DNA of 57,488 nt, the filler included, from Platydemus manokwari (lineage: Eukaryota): assembly GCA_037951405.1 (NCBI GenBank). It is 4 parts of 4 records of this genome, joined end to end, with 100 filler letters (N's around TTAATTAATTAA, not from the genome) between each part and the next. Parts side by side here need not be neighbours in the genome. Positions count along the whole stretch, not along the records: positions 1 to 19,342 come from JBBMOY010022236.1; 3 more parts are not named here. One strand, 5' to 3'. The notes under the pieces were generated by a model that saw only the letters and a list, made by a program, of their open reading frames with translations, did not search any database and had not been told where the DNA came from. Below, piece by piece: positions 3,007 to 19,442 of this stretch (position 1 is the stretch's first letter; each line of letters begins with the position of its first letter). The translations under genes were made by a program, and so were the position numbers.

Positions 3007-3051
<45 letters not shown>
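3007..3051. repeat. (TAA)n microsatellite
   Basis: Pure trinucleotide run. It explains the poly-Ile and poly-Tyr spurious ORFs at 2851-3153. Confidence 0.9.
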
Positions 3052-4080
3052 TCTTCTGCAGCTATTATATATAAATATCAACTTAATATCGATATAAATT
3101 AGTTTGTAATTGTGAATATTGATTTCAGTTTTGATCTCCATCCCCAAAAGCACTTCATAACGTGGTCAATAAATGAAATTTCCATTGCAATTATTTTTTA
3201 TTAACTTAAACACAACAAATTATGATAATCGAATTTATGGTTGAAAGCTCTCAGTACTTGACTTATTCATTAGTTTTAAATCATAAATTTTATATTTCAC
3301 TAATAAATTAATGTGAAGTGATATTATCACTCTCTCTCTCTCACATACACACACGCGCGCACACGCACACACATTTTATTATCGCGATATCAACATACAG
3401 ACATTAAAACAAATTTTGCAAATCTTTATCAAATAATATGAAATATGGTTTTGAAAAATACTGTTTCCACTTAATCAATTTAGATTCCCAAAACATAAAT
3501 CAATAAAATGGTGGTCAAGCAAAACCCCATAATATCGAAACTGTCTCATTCAGTCGTATATTTATGTCATGGTCGAATTATCACCACCAACTCTATGGTT
3601 GAAATATCAATCCATTATTTTCATTATTCTTAATCATTAGGAAAACATTTTCGTGAAACAAATGCCGTATATTGCCAACATCTTTCAAACAAAGATCCAA
3701 AATTTCCAAAAACCAGTCAAAACAAAAATACTCCATATTTGTTTAAATGATTGATTTGAAGCACTTCCTTTTAAATATAGCCTTGAAATTCTAAATTTAA
3801 TGACTAACACACATACACACATTATTAGAGATGAGTTGTAACACACATGCACACACACACTCGAAATGATAGAAAGATCAGAGAAAACATTTTTAACACC
3901 GCATAAAATCAATTATTACAAATATCAAGAGATAAAATTATGCATTTAAATTTGTCTCGATCGAGCAAAAAACATTTGAAATGGTAACCATAGCAACGGG
4001 AAACCATCCCATAAATGAGAGCGAGTGTATTATAATAATAGAAATAGCAACAGCAAATCAAGACAACAATTATCAACAAT

Positions 4081-7000
4081 TTATTTCACCATAGCAACAC
4101 ATGAAGGACACACAAAATTCAATAATTTCGGATCCAGATGTGGATTAACGCAGTTGACATCGATGCTGGCACAAGCACAATGCAAATGCAGAACGGTAAA
4201 GCAACTCAAGCAATGCACCAAGATTCTCGATCGAGAATTATCGATGATGAGATCTAGTAGACAGATTGGACACAAAGGTGGTCGTGTTGTCATGGAGATC
4301 TCAACATCTACATCGTTGTTATCGATTTCAAAACTTTTCTCATTTTCATCCTCGCACAAATCAATAATTTGCGGCTGTTCTGGTTTCGACGATTTGTCGA
4401 CAGGAATGGCTTCATTCCAAGTAATCATTGTTGCTATTGGTAACGGTTCAGTGATATTCCATGAAAACAGTGCCTTATCGACTGATAGATTCTCGCCTTT
4501 AACGATGCGACGCGTAGAGAAAAGTCCTGAAATATTTCAATCCAGCATTGGCCAGCAATAACCAATCGCGTTATTTCTTACCGATTCGCGTGGTTCCCGC
4601 AACAGATAAATGTTTGGCCCGCAGATTTGGTCTATCAGATGGCTGGATAAATCGAGCCAGATTGCAATATCGGCTGCAATCAATGACGGATTCGCCAGAC
4701 AAGCTGACAGAGCATGAGCTGGCATTATTTGATGAGGCTCGAGATCTGATTTGTCCCACAAGTTCCATCACGAGTATGTCCTGCAATCAAATGATTCAAA
4801 TAATATAACCGGGGAGAGGGATCTCAAATAACCTTGACAACAGGCTCCTCAAGTACCACATTGATGGCGTTATTATCAAGCTCATTTATTAAGCGACAGC
4901 GCGGATAATGACGCTTTTGCAAACGCCTATTTCTGCATCGCAACGCGTCACAACAATTATCAGCGGTGCATTCAATATTGGCCATAACATTGGGACATTT
5001 TATTGTTGTACAACAATCGGTACAAGCACACTTCACGCTTGATTGAATTGATTCGAATCGCTACGAATATAAATATCGATTAGGAATAAGAATTTGAATA
5101 ATCAATGGTGCAATTTCATCAAGGCTAATGACGAATAGATGAGAGATACAAAAATAATACCCCTCCCTCACATTGCCATGGTAACGCATCATTGATTATA
5201 TAATCAATTCAATTTCCACTCACCCCTGAAGGGCGATCGATATCGATATTCTCTATTATTGGAAATAATCCAGAATAATGCAATACAAAAGCATTGCGAT
5301 AAAATGTTTGGCGCATTTTTAATCGATCACGGACATGTGCCACGGTATGGGATAAATGTTGTAAAGCTCGTTGCATATCTGAAATGAATACAGATCGAAT
5401 CGATCAAAACATGAGTATTCAATACAAATAGATCAATTGTACCATCGAAACGACTGAGACCAAAACAAGCCAACTGGTCGAGTGATTGTAAATTGATTGA
5501 TATTATTCTCGACATATCCGTTACGGTCCATTGATCATATTCATGATGATGATGATGATGATGATGCTGATGTGTAGCAATGGAATATTTGTTATCGATA
5601 ATATTGTCATCAATTTTGGGATAAACAAATTGATAATCATTAACACTAGTTGGTGTTTCGATATTGGCTGGCACCATCAAATATGGATAACTAGCACGAC
5701 GAGCAAATGGGAAACTTTCAGGAAAACAATGAACAGATAATGTATTATGAGAATATCATTTCAATTGATCACATCATACTTGCAACCGTGACAAATGAAT
5801 GTTTTCTCATCTATTGACGATGATGATGATGATGATGAAGGCAATTGATTCTGTTGGTGAATGATTGATGATGTCATTGATGATGTATTGGGTAAGCAGA
5901 TATCATTGTTGTGATAAGTGACAGAGCAATATTTGCATGATATCTATCATATCATATTATCATATAATCTTTCCATAATATATTATCATTATATTTCCAA
6001 AATATATATTATTACTATATTTTCTCATATTATATTCCCATAATATATTATCATTATATATTATCATGATGATTGATATCAATTAATGAGTAATTATTTA
6101 ACTATTAAATCACTAAAATGGTAATAAAGGCCCAAATCAATAATAAAATAATCAATATACAGGGTAATTCAAAATCAGAAATCTGTTTGAAAGATTGCCT
6201 GAAACAACAATTTAAACACTCGAAATGATTTGTTCCAAACGTTACACACATTGCATAATACCTATCCAACCCCACCCAATCAAATAAGAGCTATTGTGTA
6301 ACATCACGAATTACAATGAAACCTATCGATATCATTGCGTTTCATTGAATCAAAAATGTGTCGTCATGAGCTTGAGCCGTGATTGTATGCATTGTGTGCA
6401 AAAATATCATGACGTGTGTGTGTGTGTGCAGAACAAAAATATCTCTGCACCTTTGTGCCACTTGGTTAATTCATTTCATACAAGTTTGTCAAATGAGATG
6501 CCTATCCAACACACATACACGCACACATGCACAATGACGTCTCTCCATGTAGCGCGGTAAGTTATTACAGACCATCAAAAATACATTTAAATAATTAATA
6601 ATGGAAAATTAATTATAAACAATTATTAATAAATAATTAATATTAATTAAAAAATAATTAAAATAAAATGATAATTAATGAAATAGCACAGTGATATGAT
6701 TATTAATTAAGCCACATAAAATCGATAAACATGAAATAAATTGATAAAATAAATAAAAATAAAACCCAATTTTTGTCGCCATCATCAAACCGTTTGGTAC
6801 ACGCAAAGCAAAACCGGGAAACATTGGATGGCAAACAATGAGATTGAATCAAATGCCGATAGCAAATCATCAGATGTGATGTTATCGGAAAATATTTGGC
6901 TGGCAAACAAGCAGGATTGTTATGAAATGATAATTTGCATCTATGAGAAAACATGAGATCATTATTGGCATCTTTGATATGATGTGTGTGTGTGTCTCAC

Positions 7001-8071
7001 TTGATACAATGAACCAGATCATTGATCGCTTGATCTGGATCATTATTATTGACAGATGGCACGATATAATCGAGATTACAATTGACACAATGATGTAATG
7101 GGCATTGTTTTATATCAGCACCATTCGACCACGACAACATATCCACATGAGCACTCAAGCATGACCGATGATACGGTCGCATGCATTGATGATTCTGATA
7201 GGAAATATATTATCAATTATAATGCAAGGCTCATATCTCAACAATATTCCTTACATCGCACACAAATAATTGAGCCACACTGATTGATTGATCACAAATA
7301 TTGCATATCCAAACACTCTTGTTGCAACTACAGATCAAATCTAAATCCAAACAATGCTTATATTTCGTGGACAATATTTCAAACATGTTTACCATTTTCA
7401 TCTCTTACACATGCTTCATGATATTTCCAAATGCAATAATTGGCACATTTCTTCTCTTTGCCATCAATATTATCAATGAATATTTTTGATAAATATCTTT
7501 CTACATGTCGACATTAAACAAATTCACCAATAAGAATATCATTAATACTTCGATCTTCGCCATTCATTTCTAATAAACTCTTGTTTAAAGAACTAGAATC
7601 AAATTCAATCATTTTATTCAAGCAGATTTCACAAGGTTGCAAATTAGTTTTATCAATTTGGTCATTATTTGTGATCATTTTATCTACATCCATGTTGTCA
7701 CCATTTTTTGTCTTTTCGCAATAACTTAAATTTGTCTTTTGAAGTTTATCATAAGATTTCCAAGCTTTATTGTATACATCAACCATTGCTGGTGGAACAT
7801 AATTTAAATATTTGGAGTTTGGACTATTTATTTGTAGTTGACTCAAATAAATTTCCATATCGTGTTTAGAAGTACAATTTATCACATTACCAACTTCGAT
7901 CCATGTTTCAGTGTTAATTTCGAGTAATTTAACAAATACTTGCCGATTGTTTTCGAGCTCATTATAATATTTATTAGTTTTAGAATCTCTTATAATTATT
8001 CCTGGCCACCATGGATTGGTACCCAATTTTCCAATAACCAATTCTTTTTCTGAATATTGATGATTTATCAT
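4081..8071 (-). CDS. NSD: NSD/MES-4-family chromatin protein (PWWP, PHD cluster, AWS, degenerate SET, PHD), ~849 aa, probably catalytically inactive
   Basis: Hand-spliced GT-AG exons with consistent phases: 8071-7549 (alternative donor 7528), 7500-7393, 7340-7255, 7194-7001, 6940-6766, 5943-5780, 5714-5443, 5378-5224, 5060-4833, 4780-4582, 4526-4081 (TAA). Motifs: PWWP KLGTNPWWPG; NSD-type PHD signatures CPLHHCVNC...LVHCIKCKLSFH...CLPA...ICYRH and NVSRFCFAC; AWS CAC..CC...CPN.....EC....C....CRNRRLQKR; SET-like ELVG / ID..YCNLARFI / TRIGLFS; terminal PHD CPIC...HCLSCFTVLHLHC...FVCPSC. Additional upstream exons cannot be excluded. Confidence 0.85.
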
Positions 8072-8479
8072 GGAGATAGACAATTAAAATTGGTATTAAA
8101 AGTTATGTAATTCTAAATTAATTGTAAAATTAAAATATTATTTTGAATTCACTCATTATTCAAACAACAATATTTTTAAATGGAAAAAATAAATGAAAAA
8201 TATTTTAAAAGAACTTCGAAAAAATAACTTTCGCTTGGTTTGAACATTACTGAAAAATAAGTTTATAATTACTTCATTGTTACTTACTGTTTCCTAATGT
8301 TTGATTGTAAATAATTAAAAAATATGCTTAAGTGTTCTAGAAAATATTTTTCTGAATTTCATTCATCGTATTCACATGATTTGTGTAGATGATAAATATG
8401 TTTTATCTTGTGAATAAAATAAAACGGCATCAAGAAAACTTAACACGTGAAATTTATTTATAAGTGAATTTATTCATCA

Positions 8480-10250
8480 AATTACCAATTAATAAAGTAT
8501 CTCATATATTATGATGCACTTTTTAATCAAAAATCCCAGGAATATTAGTGCTTGATTATCACAATTTTTGGAATAAATTATGACATCATTTACATAAATC
8601 ATTGAGAGATGTAAGTCCATGAACATGGGTTTCATTTCTCCAAATGGCATTACTACGTGGATATTAGTGTGTCATCCATTTGCCAGATTAAGTCTAACTT
8701 TTGAAAATTAATTACGCCATCCTTTCTTTGTTCACTATTTCATCAATTAATGGTTATGAAAAGATGTCTTCTTACTTATTCTTTTACCTTCCTGTAACTT
8801 ATGCACATCCGTATACTTACTTCTCTCTTTTTCACAATTACTATGAGCTATCTTCATAATGAGAAAGTCGGTTTATTTCATTCTTATTGTAATGATTCAT
8901 CTTTTTTTGCTGGATTTTGGCTTCTATTTTTACAGACATGTTGCTATACTAGTTCTTTCAATGAATTATTTATTTATTTAGAATACTTATCCTTTTCCAC
9001 GTAGTGATTTGTCTATGCAAAATATATTGTCTTCATTATGGGTGGAGTTATGAGATCATTTTCCATATATGTAAACGGCAACTTCTATTGCAATTTTTGA
9101 CATTTTCACAAATTGCCTTCTGCGCGTTTGTATACAACATTCTTTAATTGTGATATTACATTTTTTATTAAGCACTCTTAAGATCAGAGATCCGATAATC
9201 CTCCAATAACAAATATACTATGTTCTACTAAATGTATTTTGCAATTCATTATTTCTCTAAACTGTAATATGTCTCCTCCTACTTCACGAATTTTAATTCC
9301 TGCTCGTCAGATTAGCTGTCAGATTTCTTTAATATTCAATGTTCTTGAATGCATAATCATGGTATTAGCTCCCGTGTCAATTAATCTCATTAACTGATGC
9401 TTATTTAATCTTATCCTGACCTGTTTGACTCATCTTACAATTGTATTCCGTGAATTATAATTGCTTTTGCCTATGTAAAGTACTGTCCCTTTTAGTCGAG
9501 TTTATCTGTTAATCATGTTCTTGAGCTAGTTGTGTGATTTCATTGAACAGATAAGAGTCATTGCTTAACCATGATTGTTTCTCACTTGATCCGCTGGCCT
9601 TTAATAAAGATAAAAGATCACTTAAAAATGAGATTAAGTTGGTCTTTTAGCCTAATGTTTTTTTTATATCCTGATTTGTTTGTTATGACACACTTTTAAC
9701 TTTACGGTTATAAATTTATAGAGCATATAAGAATTGTATCCTATAACGACTGTGTTTGTACAATATAGAATTCCCTACGACAATGAAAAATTCATATGTG
9801 AATTCACTCAAGCATCCAAATAACGTGTAAATATGATACGTCATCATTTCCTGATATATTTCTGATTTAATTATGATTATTATGAGGTATATTCCTGCTC
9901 ATACTGCCATAAATGTTACTAAATCTGTGAATATTCTTCATATTTGCTGTACTACGTTATTTGCAATATTGTAAAATGTTTTGCTGCGAAAATTTATCAT
10001 AATTTCATCCTAGATTTCCGTTTGTACGAATGGTTCCAATGATTTCTGATAATTCTGTACCCCTTAGTTGTGGGAATACCAGTGTTTTGCGTGCCTCTTC
10101 CATGTCCATTAGTGTGTAAATTACTCTTTTCTCAATATTTTCTATTGAATGAGACTAAATATGTCTATATAATATTCAGAAATCTCAAGATTATTTCCCT
10201 TCTCTGAGTGGTCATCTATTTCTAATCGATACCCATTGTTCATCTATTTT
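8480..10250 (-). mobile_element. Highly decayed Ty3/gypsy gag-pol remnant (protease and N-terminal RT)
   Basis: Minus-strand translation gives protease QVRIRLNKHQLMRLIDTGANTMIMH (~9430-9350) and RT fragments IRMCISYRKV, PLIDEIVN, VVMPFG, MIYVNDVIIYS. These parallel the element at 41048-42755 and contain many stops and indels. The gag boundary is approximate. Confidence 0.7.
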
Positions 10251-11746: not shown

Positions 11747-14128
11747 AAAATAAATCTTTGCGTCTTCAACTTGAATTTGTTGTATCGAAACAATATCAAA
11801 CAGCAAGTAAATATGTCTTCTTCGTCTTGGTAAGTCAAGCTGTGCTCAACAAAATCTATAAGATATAAAAACATTTCACTCTTTTTCTTCCTTCAACTTA
11901 AAATGGCTCATTGACTAGCCTTGTTAATTCTTTTTAAATCATTTCCTTAGCACACTCCAATGACGTGACTCTTGATTTGGCCTCAATGTTAATACTCATT
12001 AGCAGTTACAATTTTGTCGATAATGACCGATTATTAGCAATTTTAATTGTAAACGACTATTTTTAACTTTAAATATTGAAAAAGAATTAATTTATGAAAA
12101 TATTTTTAATCATTTCTAAATCGTGTTTATTTTTGTTCTCCTGGTTTAACTATTTTCTTGTGATTTTATTGATTTTGTTCGCATTTTATTATTTATGATT
12201 TAACAAAAATCTATTTTATGTTTATCTAATATTACATTGACTAGCCTGGCTTACACTTGACATTCTCGATCAATATATATTTCAACAAATATCTTTATTC
12301 TTCACAATTATTACATTAACTGCTAATTCTTCTTCAATCAATATTTTCTTATAAATCAATATATTCTTCTCAAATCAACTCTTCTCTCCAGCTCATAATT
12401 TACTCTTAAAATGATATTTTCATCAATAATTTCATCGCTTCATTCAACTTATTCTATTCAGATGTTACATTTCAATCAATAAATCCCTTTTGATTTTAAC
12501 AACATTTAGCTCGGAAATTTCTATTTTTCACCAAATCTGTTTTCTGTTGATATTAATCTCTCTTCTTTTCTCTCTCTCTCTCTTATTCCCATTGTCTCTG
12601 AGTTTTTATATCAGATTTGTACCGAATTTGTATCAGATTTATTATTTCAATGCTGTCGAATTATTTGATTCTTCTGATTGGTTATAAATAAAATGAAAAT
12701 CATTTATTTTAATCCGGTTATTCACTTTGCTTGTATTGATTATTCCGTGCGAATTATATTTTGCTAATCCGCTAATCATTTGAGCGATTTTAAATCTATT
12801 TTCATCTGCTGCATTAGTTTTTTATCCATTCTATTATAAATAACACACACATTTATATACATTATATATAATTATATTATTTCTAATTATAATAGAGACA
12901 TTATATGATAATATTATTTAATATTCTTTCATCAAGTCGATATTATTATTTGGGGCCATTTATCTTGTATTATAAAATCACATTGGATAACGAATTCAAT
13001 ATAAAATGCAACTTTCGATCCAGATATAAATGTTTCCAAATCAAAAATAGGATCAATATCGAATTGTTAATCATCAAACATCAAACGAATCACTTCTATG
13101 CACACTGATGCTGTTGAATGCTCACAGAACTAAATTCGTATAGAGTTCTTAATTAATCGAATTTGGACTTGAATTACCTGTGTTATCAGGCAAGTCCCCA
13201 TCTAGAAATGATGGAGAAACAACTATTATGCGAACTAGTCCAGTCAAGAAAATCTGAAACAGCTTCGCTGCTATCCCAAAACTTTTATCTTGGTTAAAAC
13301 TGCTTTACGTAAGAATTTATGCTGATCTTCTGTACACACGTAATGCATGGCCATACCTACCGTACATATTTTCCCCAAAATGGTTTAAAATAATCCATTT
13401 TAACGAAATTCTATTTATTTCATAAATAATAGGCAGCATTGTTAGGCATTTACTTTATTATATTTTTGTCATCTCTTTGCAAGCTTTTAGCAATGCCCTC
13501 AATCTCGCAAGTCCATAATTCGGTGCGCGATAATTGGTATGAGAGAATTGCGAATTTATTATATTAGACACCTTTAGAATCAATCAATATTTCATTTTAC
13601 GTTGGATTTTTATTCAGCACACACTCAGCAAGTTCTCAGAAATTTAATATTTTTCAGCGAAAAAATTGCGATATTAAAAAGTTCCAACAAACCCCCCCCC
13701 ATTAACCCCCCCCCATTTAAACACATCAGAAAGAGATAAATTATTTATAATCGCAGATATAAATAACTGGAATTTATAAATATAAAAATGCTTTGTTTCG
13801 ATTTTGCTTTAGCCATTTAAAACCACCGAATAAAGCTGAAAGAATTTAACAAAATCTTCTGTAAATATCGAGCGCGTTGAATGAATAAGTGTAATAAAAA
13901 TAAAACAAGAACCATAGCAACCGTCATTTCTACAACATAAAGCCATACATATTGAACCAGCTGTTACGCTTTATTAATCAGATTCTGATAAACTGCTCTG
14001 AGCAATCAATAATTCTAAATAAATTCGTTTTTCCTCAAAATAAAATCGATATTAATAAATGATTTTTAAATTTTCCCAGATTCATGAAAAAGAGAAAATT
14101 TTTGAAAAATAAATTGTTTTCAAAAGCT

Positions 14129-14347
14129 CGATAATAACGTCACGGGAAATAACTCCTTCGATAATAACGTCACGGGAAATAACTCCTTCGATAATAACGT
14201 CTCGGGAAATAACTCCTTCGATAATAACGTCTCGGGAAATAACTCCTTCGATAATAACGTCACGGGAAATAACTCATTCGATAATAACGTCACGGGAAAT
14301 AACTCCTTCGATAATAACGTCTCGGGAAATAACTCCTTCGATAATAA
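14129..14347. repeat. 30-bp minisatellite, 7 copies plus a partial
   Basis: Unit ataataacgtc(a/t)cgggaaataactccttcg starting at 14131, 14161 ... 14311. No spacers. Confidence 0.97.
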
Positions 14348-18288: not shown

Positions 18289-18677
18289 AAACCAAAACAA
18301 ATGTCATAAATAACTGCCCGGAAAATTATCATTGGGATGTTGAACTGGCCATGTGTAAGCAATGCGATCCAAATATGGTGTACATCACAGAATTACGGAA
18401 ATGTCTGCATTTATCTGATGCTCAAAAGAGCTGCAAGAAAGGCTTTAAATTTGACGAATTAGAAAGAAAATGCTTGGGTAAAATGGAGAAGAGAGATCAC
18501 TTGTGATGAGATATTGATGAATATTGATTGTTTCAGATATTGATGAGTGTAATCAGGTGATATATCCATGTCAGAAAAATGAATACTGCAGAAATCTTCC
18601 AGGAAAATTCATATGTATTGTGAAACATTATTGTGGACAAGGATATGAGTTTGATACCGTCACTGAGACCTGCAAGG
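18289..18677 (+). CDS. Two internal exons of a fibulin-like calcium-binding EGF-repeat protein (partial gene)
   Basis: Symmetric phase-1 exons 18289-18477 and 18537-18677 with AG/GT borders. They encode ...SCKKGFKFDELERKCL-DIDECNQVIYPCQKNEYCRNLPGKFICIVKHYCGQGYEFDTVTETCK, matching the cbEGF consensus DIDEC...CxNxxGxFxC. Other exons were not identified. Confidence 0.8.
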
Positions 18678-19163
18678 GTAACTAATAGCTATTATGTGAT
18701 ATTGTATTTTCAATTCTTAAATTTTTCTCTACTGATTTTCTCTTTAAGAGATTTAATTGATTTATTCCTGACAACCTCTATTGTCATGACAATTTCTAGA
18801 CAAGTATTACCATTTATTGATTTATAATAGAAAAATCAATAATCAATAATTCATCAATTATTCTCATTCTAAAATGTCTTGTAGAATTCTATAAATTATT
18901 TAAGATTCGTGGCAACAAAATAGAGAAATTATAATTTATATTCAACTCAAATAAAGGGTTGTCTACTCCCTATTCAGGTTGTCAGATCGGCATGGTAACA
19001 GGAGAAATTAATCTCTCCAATTCAATAAATGTTACAGATGTCAGAGATTTGTAGAAAATATATCATTTATTTATTTTTATAAACAATAGTTTCTGTACTT
19101 ATTGATGTGTTGACAACAGATATAAGACATCAATATTTCATTTGATATCGATTAGTGTTTATA

Positions 19164-19164
<1 letters not shown>

Positions 19165-19230
<66 letters not shown>

Positions 19231-19442
19231 TCTCTTATTATAATCATCATTCGACTATTTTCTTCTTCTTTTTATTATATGAACTATTATTCAAATAATT
19301 ATTATAAAGGTTTTTATTACAGGGATAATAATAATTATTATCNNNNNNNNNNNNNNNNNNNNNNNNNNNNNNNNNNNNNNNNNNNNTTAATTAATTAANN
19401 NNNNNNNNNNNNNNNNNNNNNNNNNNNNNNNNNNNNNNNNNN

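What the first reader, a model, noticed from the sequence alone, without database searches (positions are those of the whole stretch)
4400..5060. NSD-family gene with an open reading frame but a catalytically stripped SET domain (candidate pseudo-methyltransferase)
Seen: the spliced SET region reads NNAINV instead of the SAM-binding GWG, ELVG instead of EYVG, SSCSV instead of FYML, RFIQPS instead of RFxNHS and ENLSVDK instead of ELTFNY, with no post-SET CxC...C cluster. The PWWP, PHD and AWS cysteines are kept, and the frame stays open over 11 phase-consistent exons. Known: the NH motif, these tyrosines (NSD2 Y1092/Y1118/Y1179 positions) and the post-SET zinc site are needed for H3K36 methylation. 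Inference: selection retains a reader/scaffold NSD without writer activity. It may be a decoy or regulator of H3K36me2, or a sign of remodelled H3K36 biology in this lineage.
Basis: partly seen in the sequence, partly recalled or inferred. Interest (0 to 1): 0.72.

Follow-up and report, generated by a model that had tools for sequence, protein, structure and literature searches.

The report
Catalytically dead NSD gene copy
An AT-rich animal genome carries an intact, selectively maintained extra copy of the NSD histone-methyltransferase gene whose enzyme core has lost every residue needed for catalysis, next to normal NSD genes, so it most likely works as a non-enzymatic chromatin protein.

Summary
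On the minus strand (4081-8071) I built a 12-exon, all GT-AG, phase-consistent model of 830 codons with no stop. Domain order is NSD-like: PWWP1, PHD fingers, degenerate PWWP2, AWS, SET, C-terminal PHD. All AWS cysteines are kept. GWG, the Tyr of EYVGE, FYM, NHSC, the catalytic Tyr of ELTFNY and the post-SET CxCxxxxC are all replaced. Three of these positions (NSD2 Y1092, H1142, Y1179) each abolish activity when mutated alone. No alternative canonical SET exon exists in the window.

It is not a decaying pseudogene. The chance of 830 open codons at the local stop density is about 1e-29. Exon 1 has a 52%-identical relative in a metagenome (dN/dS about 0.3). A second, 38%-identical copy of the C-terminus also lacks the post-SET zinc motif.

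The genome keeps intact H3K36 writers: two canonical NSD genes, an ASH1-like gene and other AWS-SET genes. "Remodelled H3K36 biology" is therefore not supported. "Reader" is doubtful, because two of three PWWP1 cage aromatics are lost and the PWWP2 motif is deleted.

No RNA data exist. The SET core itself has no comparative data. Verdict: a new non-catalytic variant of a known family, of moderate interest.

The parts
7549..8071 (-). Exon 1: ATG at 8071, PWWP1 domain (GKLGTNPWWPG), first Cys pair of PHD1. An in-frame stop lies 15 nt upstream with no AG between it and the ATG.
   Evidence: Pfam PWWP E 4.2e-8. A profile built with P0001 hits NSD3 and NSD2 PWWP1 structures best, E 6.5e-6. 52% identical to P0001 over 173 codons, dN/dS 0.31.
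7393..7500 (-). Exon 2: second half of PHD1 (C-ANY-C-IWKY-H-EA-C)
   Evidence: GT-AG, phase 1 in and out. The donor A|GT of exon 1 lies at the same Arg-Ser position in the relative L047.
7255..7340 (-). Exon 3: PHD-type Cys pairs (LICSCNKSVWICNIC...)
   Evidence: Splice model.
7001..7194 (-). Exon 4: PHD2/3 zinc ligands (C..H..C, CPLHHCVNC)
   Evidence: Cys/His columns are invariant with both canonical NSD genes of the genome (A6).
6791..6940 (-). Exon 5: PHD3 end (CKLSFHNNPAC) and start of PHD4 (CFAC)
   Evidence: Splice model. Read by eye against L045/L042.
6161..6261 (-). Exon 6: middle of PHD4 (YYAMCVTFGTNHFEC). The donor is ambiguous: 6218, 6209, 6206 or 6161, all phase 1.
   Evidence: This is the least certain exon.
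5780..5810 (-). Exon 7: 31-nt micro-exon, end of PHD4 (FICHGC)
5443..5714 (-). Exon 8: degenerate PWWP2 (SYPY--LMVPANI, PWWP motif deleted) with a His8 run
   Evidence: Local alignment to the PWWP2 of the second canonical NSD (NYRYWPAQILHPTMVPANI). CAT repeat at 5543-5572.
5224..5378 (-). Exon 9: linker between PWWP2 and AWS
   Evidence: Splice model.
4833..5060 (-). Exon 10: AWS zinc cluster (all Cys kept) and first SET strand, with NNAINV in place of the GWG SAM-pocket motif
   Evidence: Pfam AWS E 0.013, below the cut-off. PDB hits are only Set2/NSD. A3. The donor K|GT is at the same place and phase as in the canonical NSD.
4582..4780 (-). Exon 11: SET core with ELVG (Y lost), SSCSV (FYM lost) and RFIQPSD (N, H and Cys lost)
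   Evidence: phmmer against PDB: the first 55 of the 60 listed hits are all SET-domain methyltransferases, best E 0.04. 39% identical to the canonical NSD core. A4.
4081..4526 (-). Exon 12: last SET strands (GENLSVDK, catalytic Tyr to Lys), no post-SET cysteines, conserved Q-I-I-D-L-C-E-D plus acidic run, C-terminal PHD finger, stop at 4083-4081
   Evidence: A5. A2 with second copy L049, 38% identity, dN/dS 0.27. Pfam PHD E 0.04-0.11.

Best explanation
This is a real, maintained, protein-coding paralogue of the NSD family (H3K36 methyltransferases) whose SET domain has become a pseudo-enzyme. It keeps the zinc-binding scaffolds (PHD fingers, AWS, C-terminal PHD) and about half of the structural skeleton of the SET fold. 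It has lost the SAM pocket (GWG, NH), both active-site tyrosines, and the whole post-SET zinc site including its SET-borne ligand. It therefore cannot transfer a methyl group (inferred from sequence plus published single-residue knock-outs). It most likely acts as a non-catalytic chromatin or partner-binding protein through its zinc fingers and the inert AWS-SET shell, working beside or against the canonical NSD enzymes that the genome retains (inferred). It is probably not a classical H3K36me reader, because PWWP1 keeps one of three cage aromatics and PWWP2 has lost its motif. Where the post-SET motif should be, both known copies carry a conserved [IV]IDLC plus acidic stretch that resembles a SUMO-interacting motif. 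That may be the new interaction handle (a lead only).
For: Gene model: 12 exons, 830 codons, all GT-AG, no stop. P(open by chance) is about 1.6e-29 at the local stop density of 7.7%. NSD identity: domain order is colinear with canonical NSD. PWWP1 best matches NSD3/NSD2 PWWP1 structures. AWS and SET exons are most similar to the genome's own NSD. One intron position and phase is shared. Loss of catalysis: A3-A5. Canonical-invariant columns kept are 12/21 in AWS/SET-N (all Cys, no GWG), 13/24 in the SET core and 1/9 in SET-C/post-SET. NSD2 Y1092A, H1142G and Y1179A each eliminate activity (PMC5935725), and the window has L, P and K there. The roles of the catalytic Tyr and post-SET are described in PMC3178901. 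No canonical SET exon elsewhere in the contig. Selection: exon 1 vs L047 gives pN 0.31, pS 0.62, dN/dS 0.31. Exon 12 vs L049 gives dN/dS 0.27. L049 also lacks post-SET Cys and any Tyr at the SET end. Canonical writers are retained. The sequence is reproduced in independent contigs.
Against: There is no RNA evidence of expression or of the splice model. No orthologue covers the SET core, so constraint on the dead domain itself is untested. dS values are near saturation. L049 is a 257-nt contig that may come from another organism in the sample. AlphaFold on single exons failed (pLDDT 30-35). The proposed mode of action (scaffold, competitor, SUMO binding) is inference only.
Confidence: 0.75

Rival explanations
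1. An unprocessed pseudogene: a duplicated NSD that lost function and is drifting, with the frame open only by luck or youth.
For: Every catalytic motif is gone, PWWP2 and the PWWP1 cage are degraded, Pfam fails on the SET exons, and no RNA data exist.
Against: Divergence from the canonical copies is deep (26-39% identity), yet 830 codons and 22 splice dinucleotides are intact. The chance of that is about 1e-29. dN/dS is about 0.3 against two independent relatives. All zinc ligands of AWS and the checked PHD fingers are kept.
Confidence: 0.08
2. A still-active methyltransferase with an unconventional active site or a non-histone substrate.
For: The SET skeleton (E.VG, ID, RF, S.PN, V.G.R) and the AWS zinc cluster are kept.
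Against: All three positions whose single mutation kills NSD2 are replaced at once. GWG and the whole post-SET lid, which forms the lysine channel (PMC3178901), are absent.
Confidence: 0.03
3. A mis-modelled gene: other exons, here or beyond the contig, supply a canonical SET/post-SET in the real mRNA.
For: Exons 6 and 7 are ambiguous, and there is no RNA to confirm the model.
Against: A six-frame Pfam SET search of the whole genome finds nothing on this contig. A motif scan of all six frames finds no RF.NH or EL.F[DN]Y; the two C.C....C and single GWG matches lie in short, unrelated frames. Exons 10-12 join with strong GT-AG sites and 52-55 nt introns and run into a stop after the PHD.
Confidence: 0.04
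4. A functional gene, but the SET remnant is only a neutral linker between the useful zinc-finger modules, with no role for the SET shell itself.
For: Comparative constraint was measured only on exon 1 and on the PHD part of exon 12. SET-C/post-SET keeps 1 of 9 invariant columns.
Against: The SET core is the part most similar to canonical NSD: 39% identity against 26% for PWWP1. It has no stop in about 178 codons (P about 7e-7).
Confidence: 0.1

Closest known systems
NSD family H3K36 di-methyltransferases (NSD1/2/3, Drosophila NSD, C. elegans MES-4), including the two canonical NSD genes of this same genome (contigs C744425, and C84121 with C1886167)
   Same: Same domain order: PWWP1, PHD fingers, PWWP2 position, AWS, SET, C-terminal PHD. 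PWWP1 is closest to the NSD3/NSD2 PWWP1 structures. AWS cysteines are all kept. One SET intron is shared with the canonical copy.
   Different: GWG, the Tyr of EYVGE, FYM, NHSC and the Tyr of ELTFNY are all replaced. There is no post-SET zinc motif and no C5HCH finger. The PWWP2 motif is deleted. Two of three PWWP1 cage aromatics are lost. The protein is only 830 aa and starts directly at PWWP1.
NSD3-short isoform (adaptor without the SET domain; PMC10815784, abstract listed)
   Same: An NSD-family product that works without methyltransferase activity.
   Different: NSD3-short is a splice isoform that simply lacks the catalytic half and depends on a functional PWWP1. Here a separate gene keeps a full-length but inert AWS-SET, and its PWWP1 cage is degraded.
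Inactive SET-domain proteins such as KMT2E (MLL5)/SETD5, Arabidopsis SUVH2/SUVH9 and many PRDMs (from general knowledge; the Atlas lead to 'inactive KMT2E-like' scored 0.78; PRDM post-SET remark in PMC3178901)
   Same: The SET fold is retained as a non-catalytic module next to reader or zinc-finger domains, and is kept by selection.
   Different: They belong to different SET subfamilies. None is an NSD-type AWS-SET with a lost post-SET. No homology beyond the SET fold.

Membership tests
NSD family (evolutionary membership) | Colinear architecture PWWP1 - PHD fingers - PWWP2 - AWS - SET - C-terminal PHD | tested here: met
   Exon-by-exon reading and alignments. PWWP2 is present only as a degenerate remnant.
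NSD family (evolutionary membership) | N-terminal PWWP of the NSD type | tested here: met
   Pfam PWWP E 4e-8. The profile of exon 1 plus P0001 hits NSD3 (E 6.5e-6) and NSD2 PWWP1 first among all PDB chains.
NSD family (evolutionary membership) | AWS zinc-cluster cysteines | tested here: met
   All Cys columns shared by the canonical AWS-SET proteins of the genome are kept. The Pfam AWS score of 16 bits is below the cut-off of 23.3.
NSD family (evolutionary membership) | SET domain recognised by the family model | tested here: inconclusive
   There is no Pfam SET hit on single exons or in the six-frame genome search. phmmer of exon 11 against PDB returns SET methyltransferases as its first 55 hits, but at E 0.04. 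Exon 11 against the genome's NSD gives E 4e-8 in the pairwise search and 0.03 genome-wide.
NSD family (evolutionary membership) | post-SET CxCxxxxC and the C5HCH finger after the C-terminal PHD | tested here: not met
   A5. The protein ends 6 residues after the last CxxC of the PHD. The canonical copy has both.
Active SET-domain lysine methyltransferase | SAM-pocket motifs GxG and (R)FxNH | tested here: not met
   NAI/NNAINV for GWG; RFIQPS for RFxNHS.
Active SET-domain lysine methyltransferase | Active-site tyrosines (NSD2 Y1092, Y1179) and the His of NHSC (H1142), each essential | tested here: not met
   L, K and P at these columns. Essentiality from PMC5935725. The NSD2 numbering was mapped from my recollection of the sequence, checked against the full-length chain 29hg_B offset.
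Active SET-domain lysine methyltransferase | Methyl transfer to a substrate | not testable with these tools
   Needs a recombinant protein assay.
Pseudogene | Frame disruptions or lost splice sites | tested here: not met
   0 stops in 830 codons; 11 of 11 introns are GT-AG.
Pseudogene | Neutral evolution (dN/dS about 1) | tested here: not met
   0.31 (exon 1 vs L047) and 0.27 (exon 12 vs L049), with dS near saturation. Not testable for exons 10-11.
Pseudo-enzyme (dead paralogue kept by selection) | Expressed as a protein | not testable with these tools
   No RNA run holds the locus.
SUMO-interacting motif (type b, PIAS-like VIDLT plus acidic tail) | Hydrophobic core [VI][VI]DL[TC] followed by an acidic/Ser run, conserved between copies | tested here: inconclusive
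   QIIDLCEDENE (window) and QVIDLCDESTDSREE (L049) align. The PIAS VIDLT core and the role of acidic flanks are from PMC3901395. This is a sequence resemblance only.

The most novel reading that the evidence does not exclude
A lineage-restricted, conserved 'pseudo-NSD' family (window gene, P0001, L049) in which the post-SET zinc lid was replaced by a SUMO-interacting acidic motif. The inert AWS-SET shell plus PHD fingers would then act as a SUMO-dependent chromatin scaffold or as a competitive antagonist of the canonical NSD enzymes on nucleosomes.
Probability: 0.12. Interest if true: 0.6.

Novelty: new variant of a known kind. Interest (0 to 1): 0.4.

Why it matters
Dead paralogues of chromatin writers (for example the inactive KMT2E/SETD5 or SUVH2/9 proteins) have repeatedly turned out to be regulators or recruiters. 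I found no report of a full-length NSD paralogue with an inert SET domain, either in the paper library or in 1.8 billion representative proteins. If it is expressed, it would be a natural separation-of-function allele: NSD architecture without catalysis. That could help to separate the scaffolding roles of NSD proteins from H3K36me2 deposition. The value is limited by the obscure, poorly assembled host genome and by the absence of expression data.

Tried and rejected
1. Pfam on single exons. Only PWWP passes; AWS and PHD are sub-threshold and SET is absent.
2. RNA evidence. No RNA run exists. Run X2, first taken for a relative, holds identical sequence, so no dN/dS could be drawn from it.
3. 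Search for orthologues covering the SET. Word searches with exon 1, exon 12 and L049, a full HMMER search with exon 1 and two metagenome scans found only P0001, on a 913-nt contig.
4. P0002-P0004 are unrelated PWWP or other proteins.
5. AlphaFold of exon 1 and exon 12 with two-row alignments gave pLDDT 35 and 30, so no fold search was run.
6. Organism identity. The Atlas taxa were uninformative, and the tools hide the name. I describe it only as an AT-rich (about 28% GC) animal genome with introns of about 50 nt.
8. The joined spliced protein was never built for, or sent to, any search or fold tool. The whole-domain Pfam scan and structure prediction were therefore left out.
9. The 'remodelled H3K36 system' idea is rejected because canonical writers are present.
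10. Literature searches for a known dead NSD paralogue found none.

Full report
**What is there.** The finding lies on the minus strand. The piece is AT-rich (26-34% GC per kb) apart from a 41.5% GC block at 4001-5000. Three-frame translation and the DNA allow a 12-exon model:
- Exon coordinates: 8071-7549, 7500-7393, 7340-7255, 7194-7001, 6940-6791, 6261-6161, 5810-5780, 5714-5443, 5378-5224, 5060-4833, 4780-4582, 4526-4084. The stop is at 4083-4081.
- All 11 introns are GT-AG and 48-529 nt long. Phases are consistent, the sum is 2490 nt = 830 codons, and no exon carries a stop.
The difference lies in the small PHD4 exons 6 and 7, where several donors, all phase 1, are possible.
- The ATG at 8071 is preceded by an in-frame stop with no AG in between, and the relative P0001 starts at the same Met.
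- Logan contigs of run X1 reproduce 3600-5530 and 5579-9500 without a difference. The only break is the CAT repeat that encodes His8.

**Is it NSD?** Yes, by descent.
- Exon 1 is a PWWP domain (Pfam E 4e-8). A profile of exon 1 plus P0001 finds the NSD3 and NSD2 PWWP1 structures first among all PDB chains (E 6.5e-6 and 0.005).
- Exons 1-7 carry PHD-type Cys/His patterns. For exon 4 the ligands are invariant with both canonical NSD genes of the genome (A6).
- Exon 8 sits where PWWP2 should be, but the motif is deleted: SYPY--LMVPANI against NYRYWPAQILHPTMVPANI.
- Exon 10 is AWS plus the first SET strand, exon 11 is the SET core, and exon 12 holds the last SET strands, an acidic stretch and one PHD finger.
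- Singly, the SET exons do not reach any Pfam threshold. However, phmmer of exon 11 against PDB returns SET-domain methyltransferases (SETD2, ASH1L, NSD1-3, EZH, MLL) as its first 55 of 60 listed hits, best E 0.04. Exon 10 returns only Set2/NSD chains.
- Against the genome's own canonical NSD, the exons align colinearly: PWWP 27%, AWS 32%, SET core 39% identity.
- The intron after the AWS/SET-N exon (..K|GT, phase 0, just before G[DE]FV) is at the same place in both genes. The next intron is shifted by five codons.

**The catalytic strip-down.** I aligned each exon, by reference, to the canonical AWS-SET proteins of the same genome: NSD on C744425, the ASH1-like ORF in L043, the AWS-SET ORF in L044 and a SETD2-like AWS piece (A3-A5).
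- All AWS cysteines are kept.
- RGWALR/KGWGIR is replaced by NNAINV.
- EYVGE is replaced by ELVGQ.
- Nine residues of the SET-I insert are deleted.
- NFYMM/HHYCL is replaced by SSCSV.
- RF(M/V)NHSC.PN is replaced by RFIQPSDRPN.
- W.VNG is replaced by LSVAG.
- GEELTFNY is replaced by GENLSVDK.
- The C.C....C.G post-SET motif has no counterpart.
- Of the columns invariant among the canonical proteins, the window copy keeps 12/21 in AWS/SET-N, 13/24 in the SET core and 1/9 in SET-C/post-SET.

In NSD2 the single mutations Y1092A, H1142G and Y1179A each eliminate H3K36 methyltransferase activity (PMC5935725). The window copy has Leu, Pro and Lys at these columns. The mapping of the NSD2 numbers uses my recollection of the sequence, checked against the offset of the full-length chain. 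The catalytic Tyr at the SET C-terminus and the post-SET lid form the lysine channel (PMC3178901). The Cys of NHSC is Asp here; that it serves as the fourth post-SET zinc ligand is my recollection of the NSD1 structure, not a tool result. No other frame of the window encodes RF.NH or EL.F[DN]Y (the two C.C....C and single GWG matches lie in short, unrelated frames), and the genome-wide six-frame SET search has no hit on this contig. Alternative exons that restore catalysis are therefore not available.

**Gene or pseudogene?** The stop density in non-coding frames of the window is 7.7%. The chance of 830 open codons is about 1.6e-29, and for the roughly 178 SET codons about 7e-7. Two relatives exist.
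- P0001 (196 aa, on a 913-nt contig of JGI metagenome 3300031718 and an ENA assembly) is 52% identical to exon 1. Its donor lies at the same Arg-Ser codon. Nei-Gojobori gives pN 0.31, pS 0.62 and dN/dS 0.31.
- Contig C282139 of the same assembly (L049, 257 nt, 44% GC) encodes a 38%-identical copy of the C-terminal exon, with dN/dS 0.27 and saturated dS. It too has no post-SET cysteines and no Tyr at the SET end, and it keeps Q[IV]IDLC[ED][DE] and the PHD finger.

The loss of the post-SET site therefore predates a deep split and has been kept in an open frame. This argues against a pseudogene. Two gaps remain: no orthologue covers exons 10-11, and no RNA run exists.

**Genomic background.** The genome (911 Mb in about 2 million contigs) retains canonical H3K36 writers:
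- NSD-A on C744425, with PWWP1, PWWP2, AWS, EYVGE, NHSC, ELTFNY, CKCGASNCSGFLG and PHD-C5HCH.
- A second NSD on C84121, with PHDs, PWWP2 and AWS with GWA. Its probable SET core lies on C1886167, with EYVGE, FYFM and RFMNHSC.
- An ASH1-like ORF with AWS-SET-Bromo-PHD-BAH, and another AWS-SET ORF.
- SETD2-like AWS fragments.

**How it probably works.** Shown: the architecture, the loss of every catalytic determinant, the retention of zinc scaffolds, and purifying selection on both ends of the protein. Inferred: it is a non-catalytic chromatin or partner-binding NSD paralogue. It is unlikely to be a methyl-lysine reader. The NSD2 PWWP1 cage is Y233/W236/F266, and Y233A or F266A abolish ligand binding (bioRxiv 10.1101/2020.11.25.398586). 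The window has N/W/L and P0001 has N/W/F at these columns, and PWWP2 is gutted. What remains is PHD fingers, AWS, an inert SET shell, and a conserved [IV]IDLC plus acidic stretch at the place of post-SET. This stretch resembles the high-affinity PIAS-type SUMO-interacting motif VIDLT with acidic flanks (PMC3901395); this is a lead, not a test. A scaffold or a competitor of the canonical NSDs is the most economical reading. NSD3-short is a precedent for catalysis-independent NSD function (PMC10815784).

**Limits.** Single-exon AlphaFold runs failed (pLDDT 35 and 30).

Noticed in passing
G000:C744425 (L042/L046), G000:C84121 (L045), G000:C1886167 (L019): The NSD family is expanded in this genome. 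There are two canonical-looking NSD genes about 50-60% identical to each other in AWS and SET core, plus the dead copy and the L049 fragment.
   Followed up: partly
G000:C282139 (L049, 257 nt, 44% GC): A second, 38%-identical copy of the dead gene's C-terminal exon sits on a tiny contig. It is unclear whether it is a paralogue or DNA of another organism in the sample.
   Followed up: partly
window 4335-4375 (minus) and L049: A conserved Q[IV]IDLC[ED][DE] plus acidic/Ser run sits where the post-SET motif should be. It resembles a PIAS-type SUMO-interacting motif.
   Followed up: partly
window 18351-18682 (+): Exons of a neighbouring gene with a calcium-binding EGF domain (Pfam EGF_CA E 4.9e-8) and a weak chitin-binding-like Cys pattern. 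This points to an animal genome.
   Followed up: partly
window 14128-14347: A clean tandem array: 30-nt unit, 7.3 copies, 97% matches. It is open on the minus strand as LLSKELFPET/VT repeats. Function unknown.
   Followed up: no
window 6555-6751 (intron 5): An AT-rich dispersed repeat. Contig depth jumps to 172 in X1 and 100 in X2, and many contigs end or join here.
   Followed up: no
window 4582-5060 versus 7393-8071: The SET exons are markedly GC-richer (42-48%) than the 5' exons of the same gene (27-29%) and than the introns (24-38%).
   Followed up: no
L012/L014 and L031/L036 (short contigs of G000): Pairs of near-identical but distinct SET1/MLL-like and SETD2-like fragments (about 85-95% aa identity) on short, GC-richer contigs. 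They suggest diverged haplotypes, recent duplicates or two related organisms in the assembly.
   Followed up: no
run X2 (organism B), window 3991-4255 and 4899-5080: A run filed under another organism label and study holds pieces of this locus with zero differences. It is either the same species under another name or cross-contamination.
   Followed up: no
window 3007-3051, 19159-19241, 5543-5572: Trinucleotide arrays (ATA x15, TTA x27, and CAT/ATG x10, the last encoding the His8 run inside exon 8).
   Followed up: no
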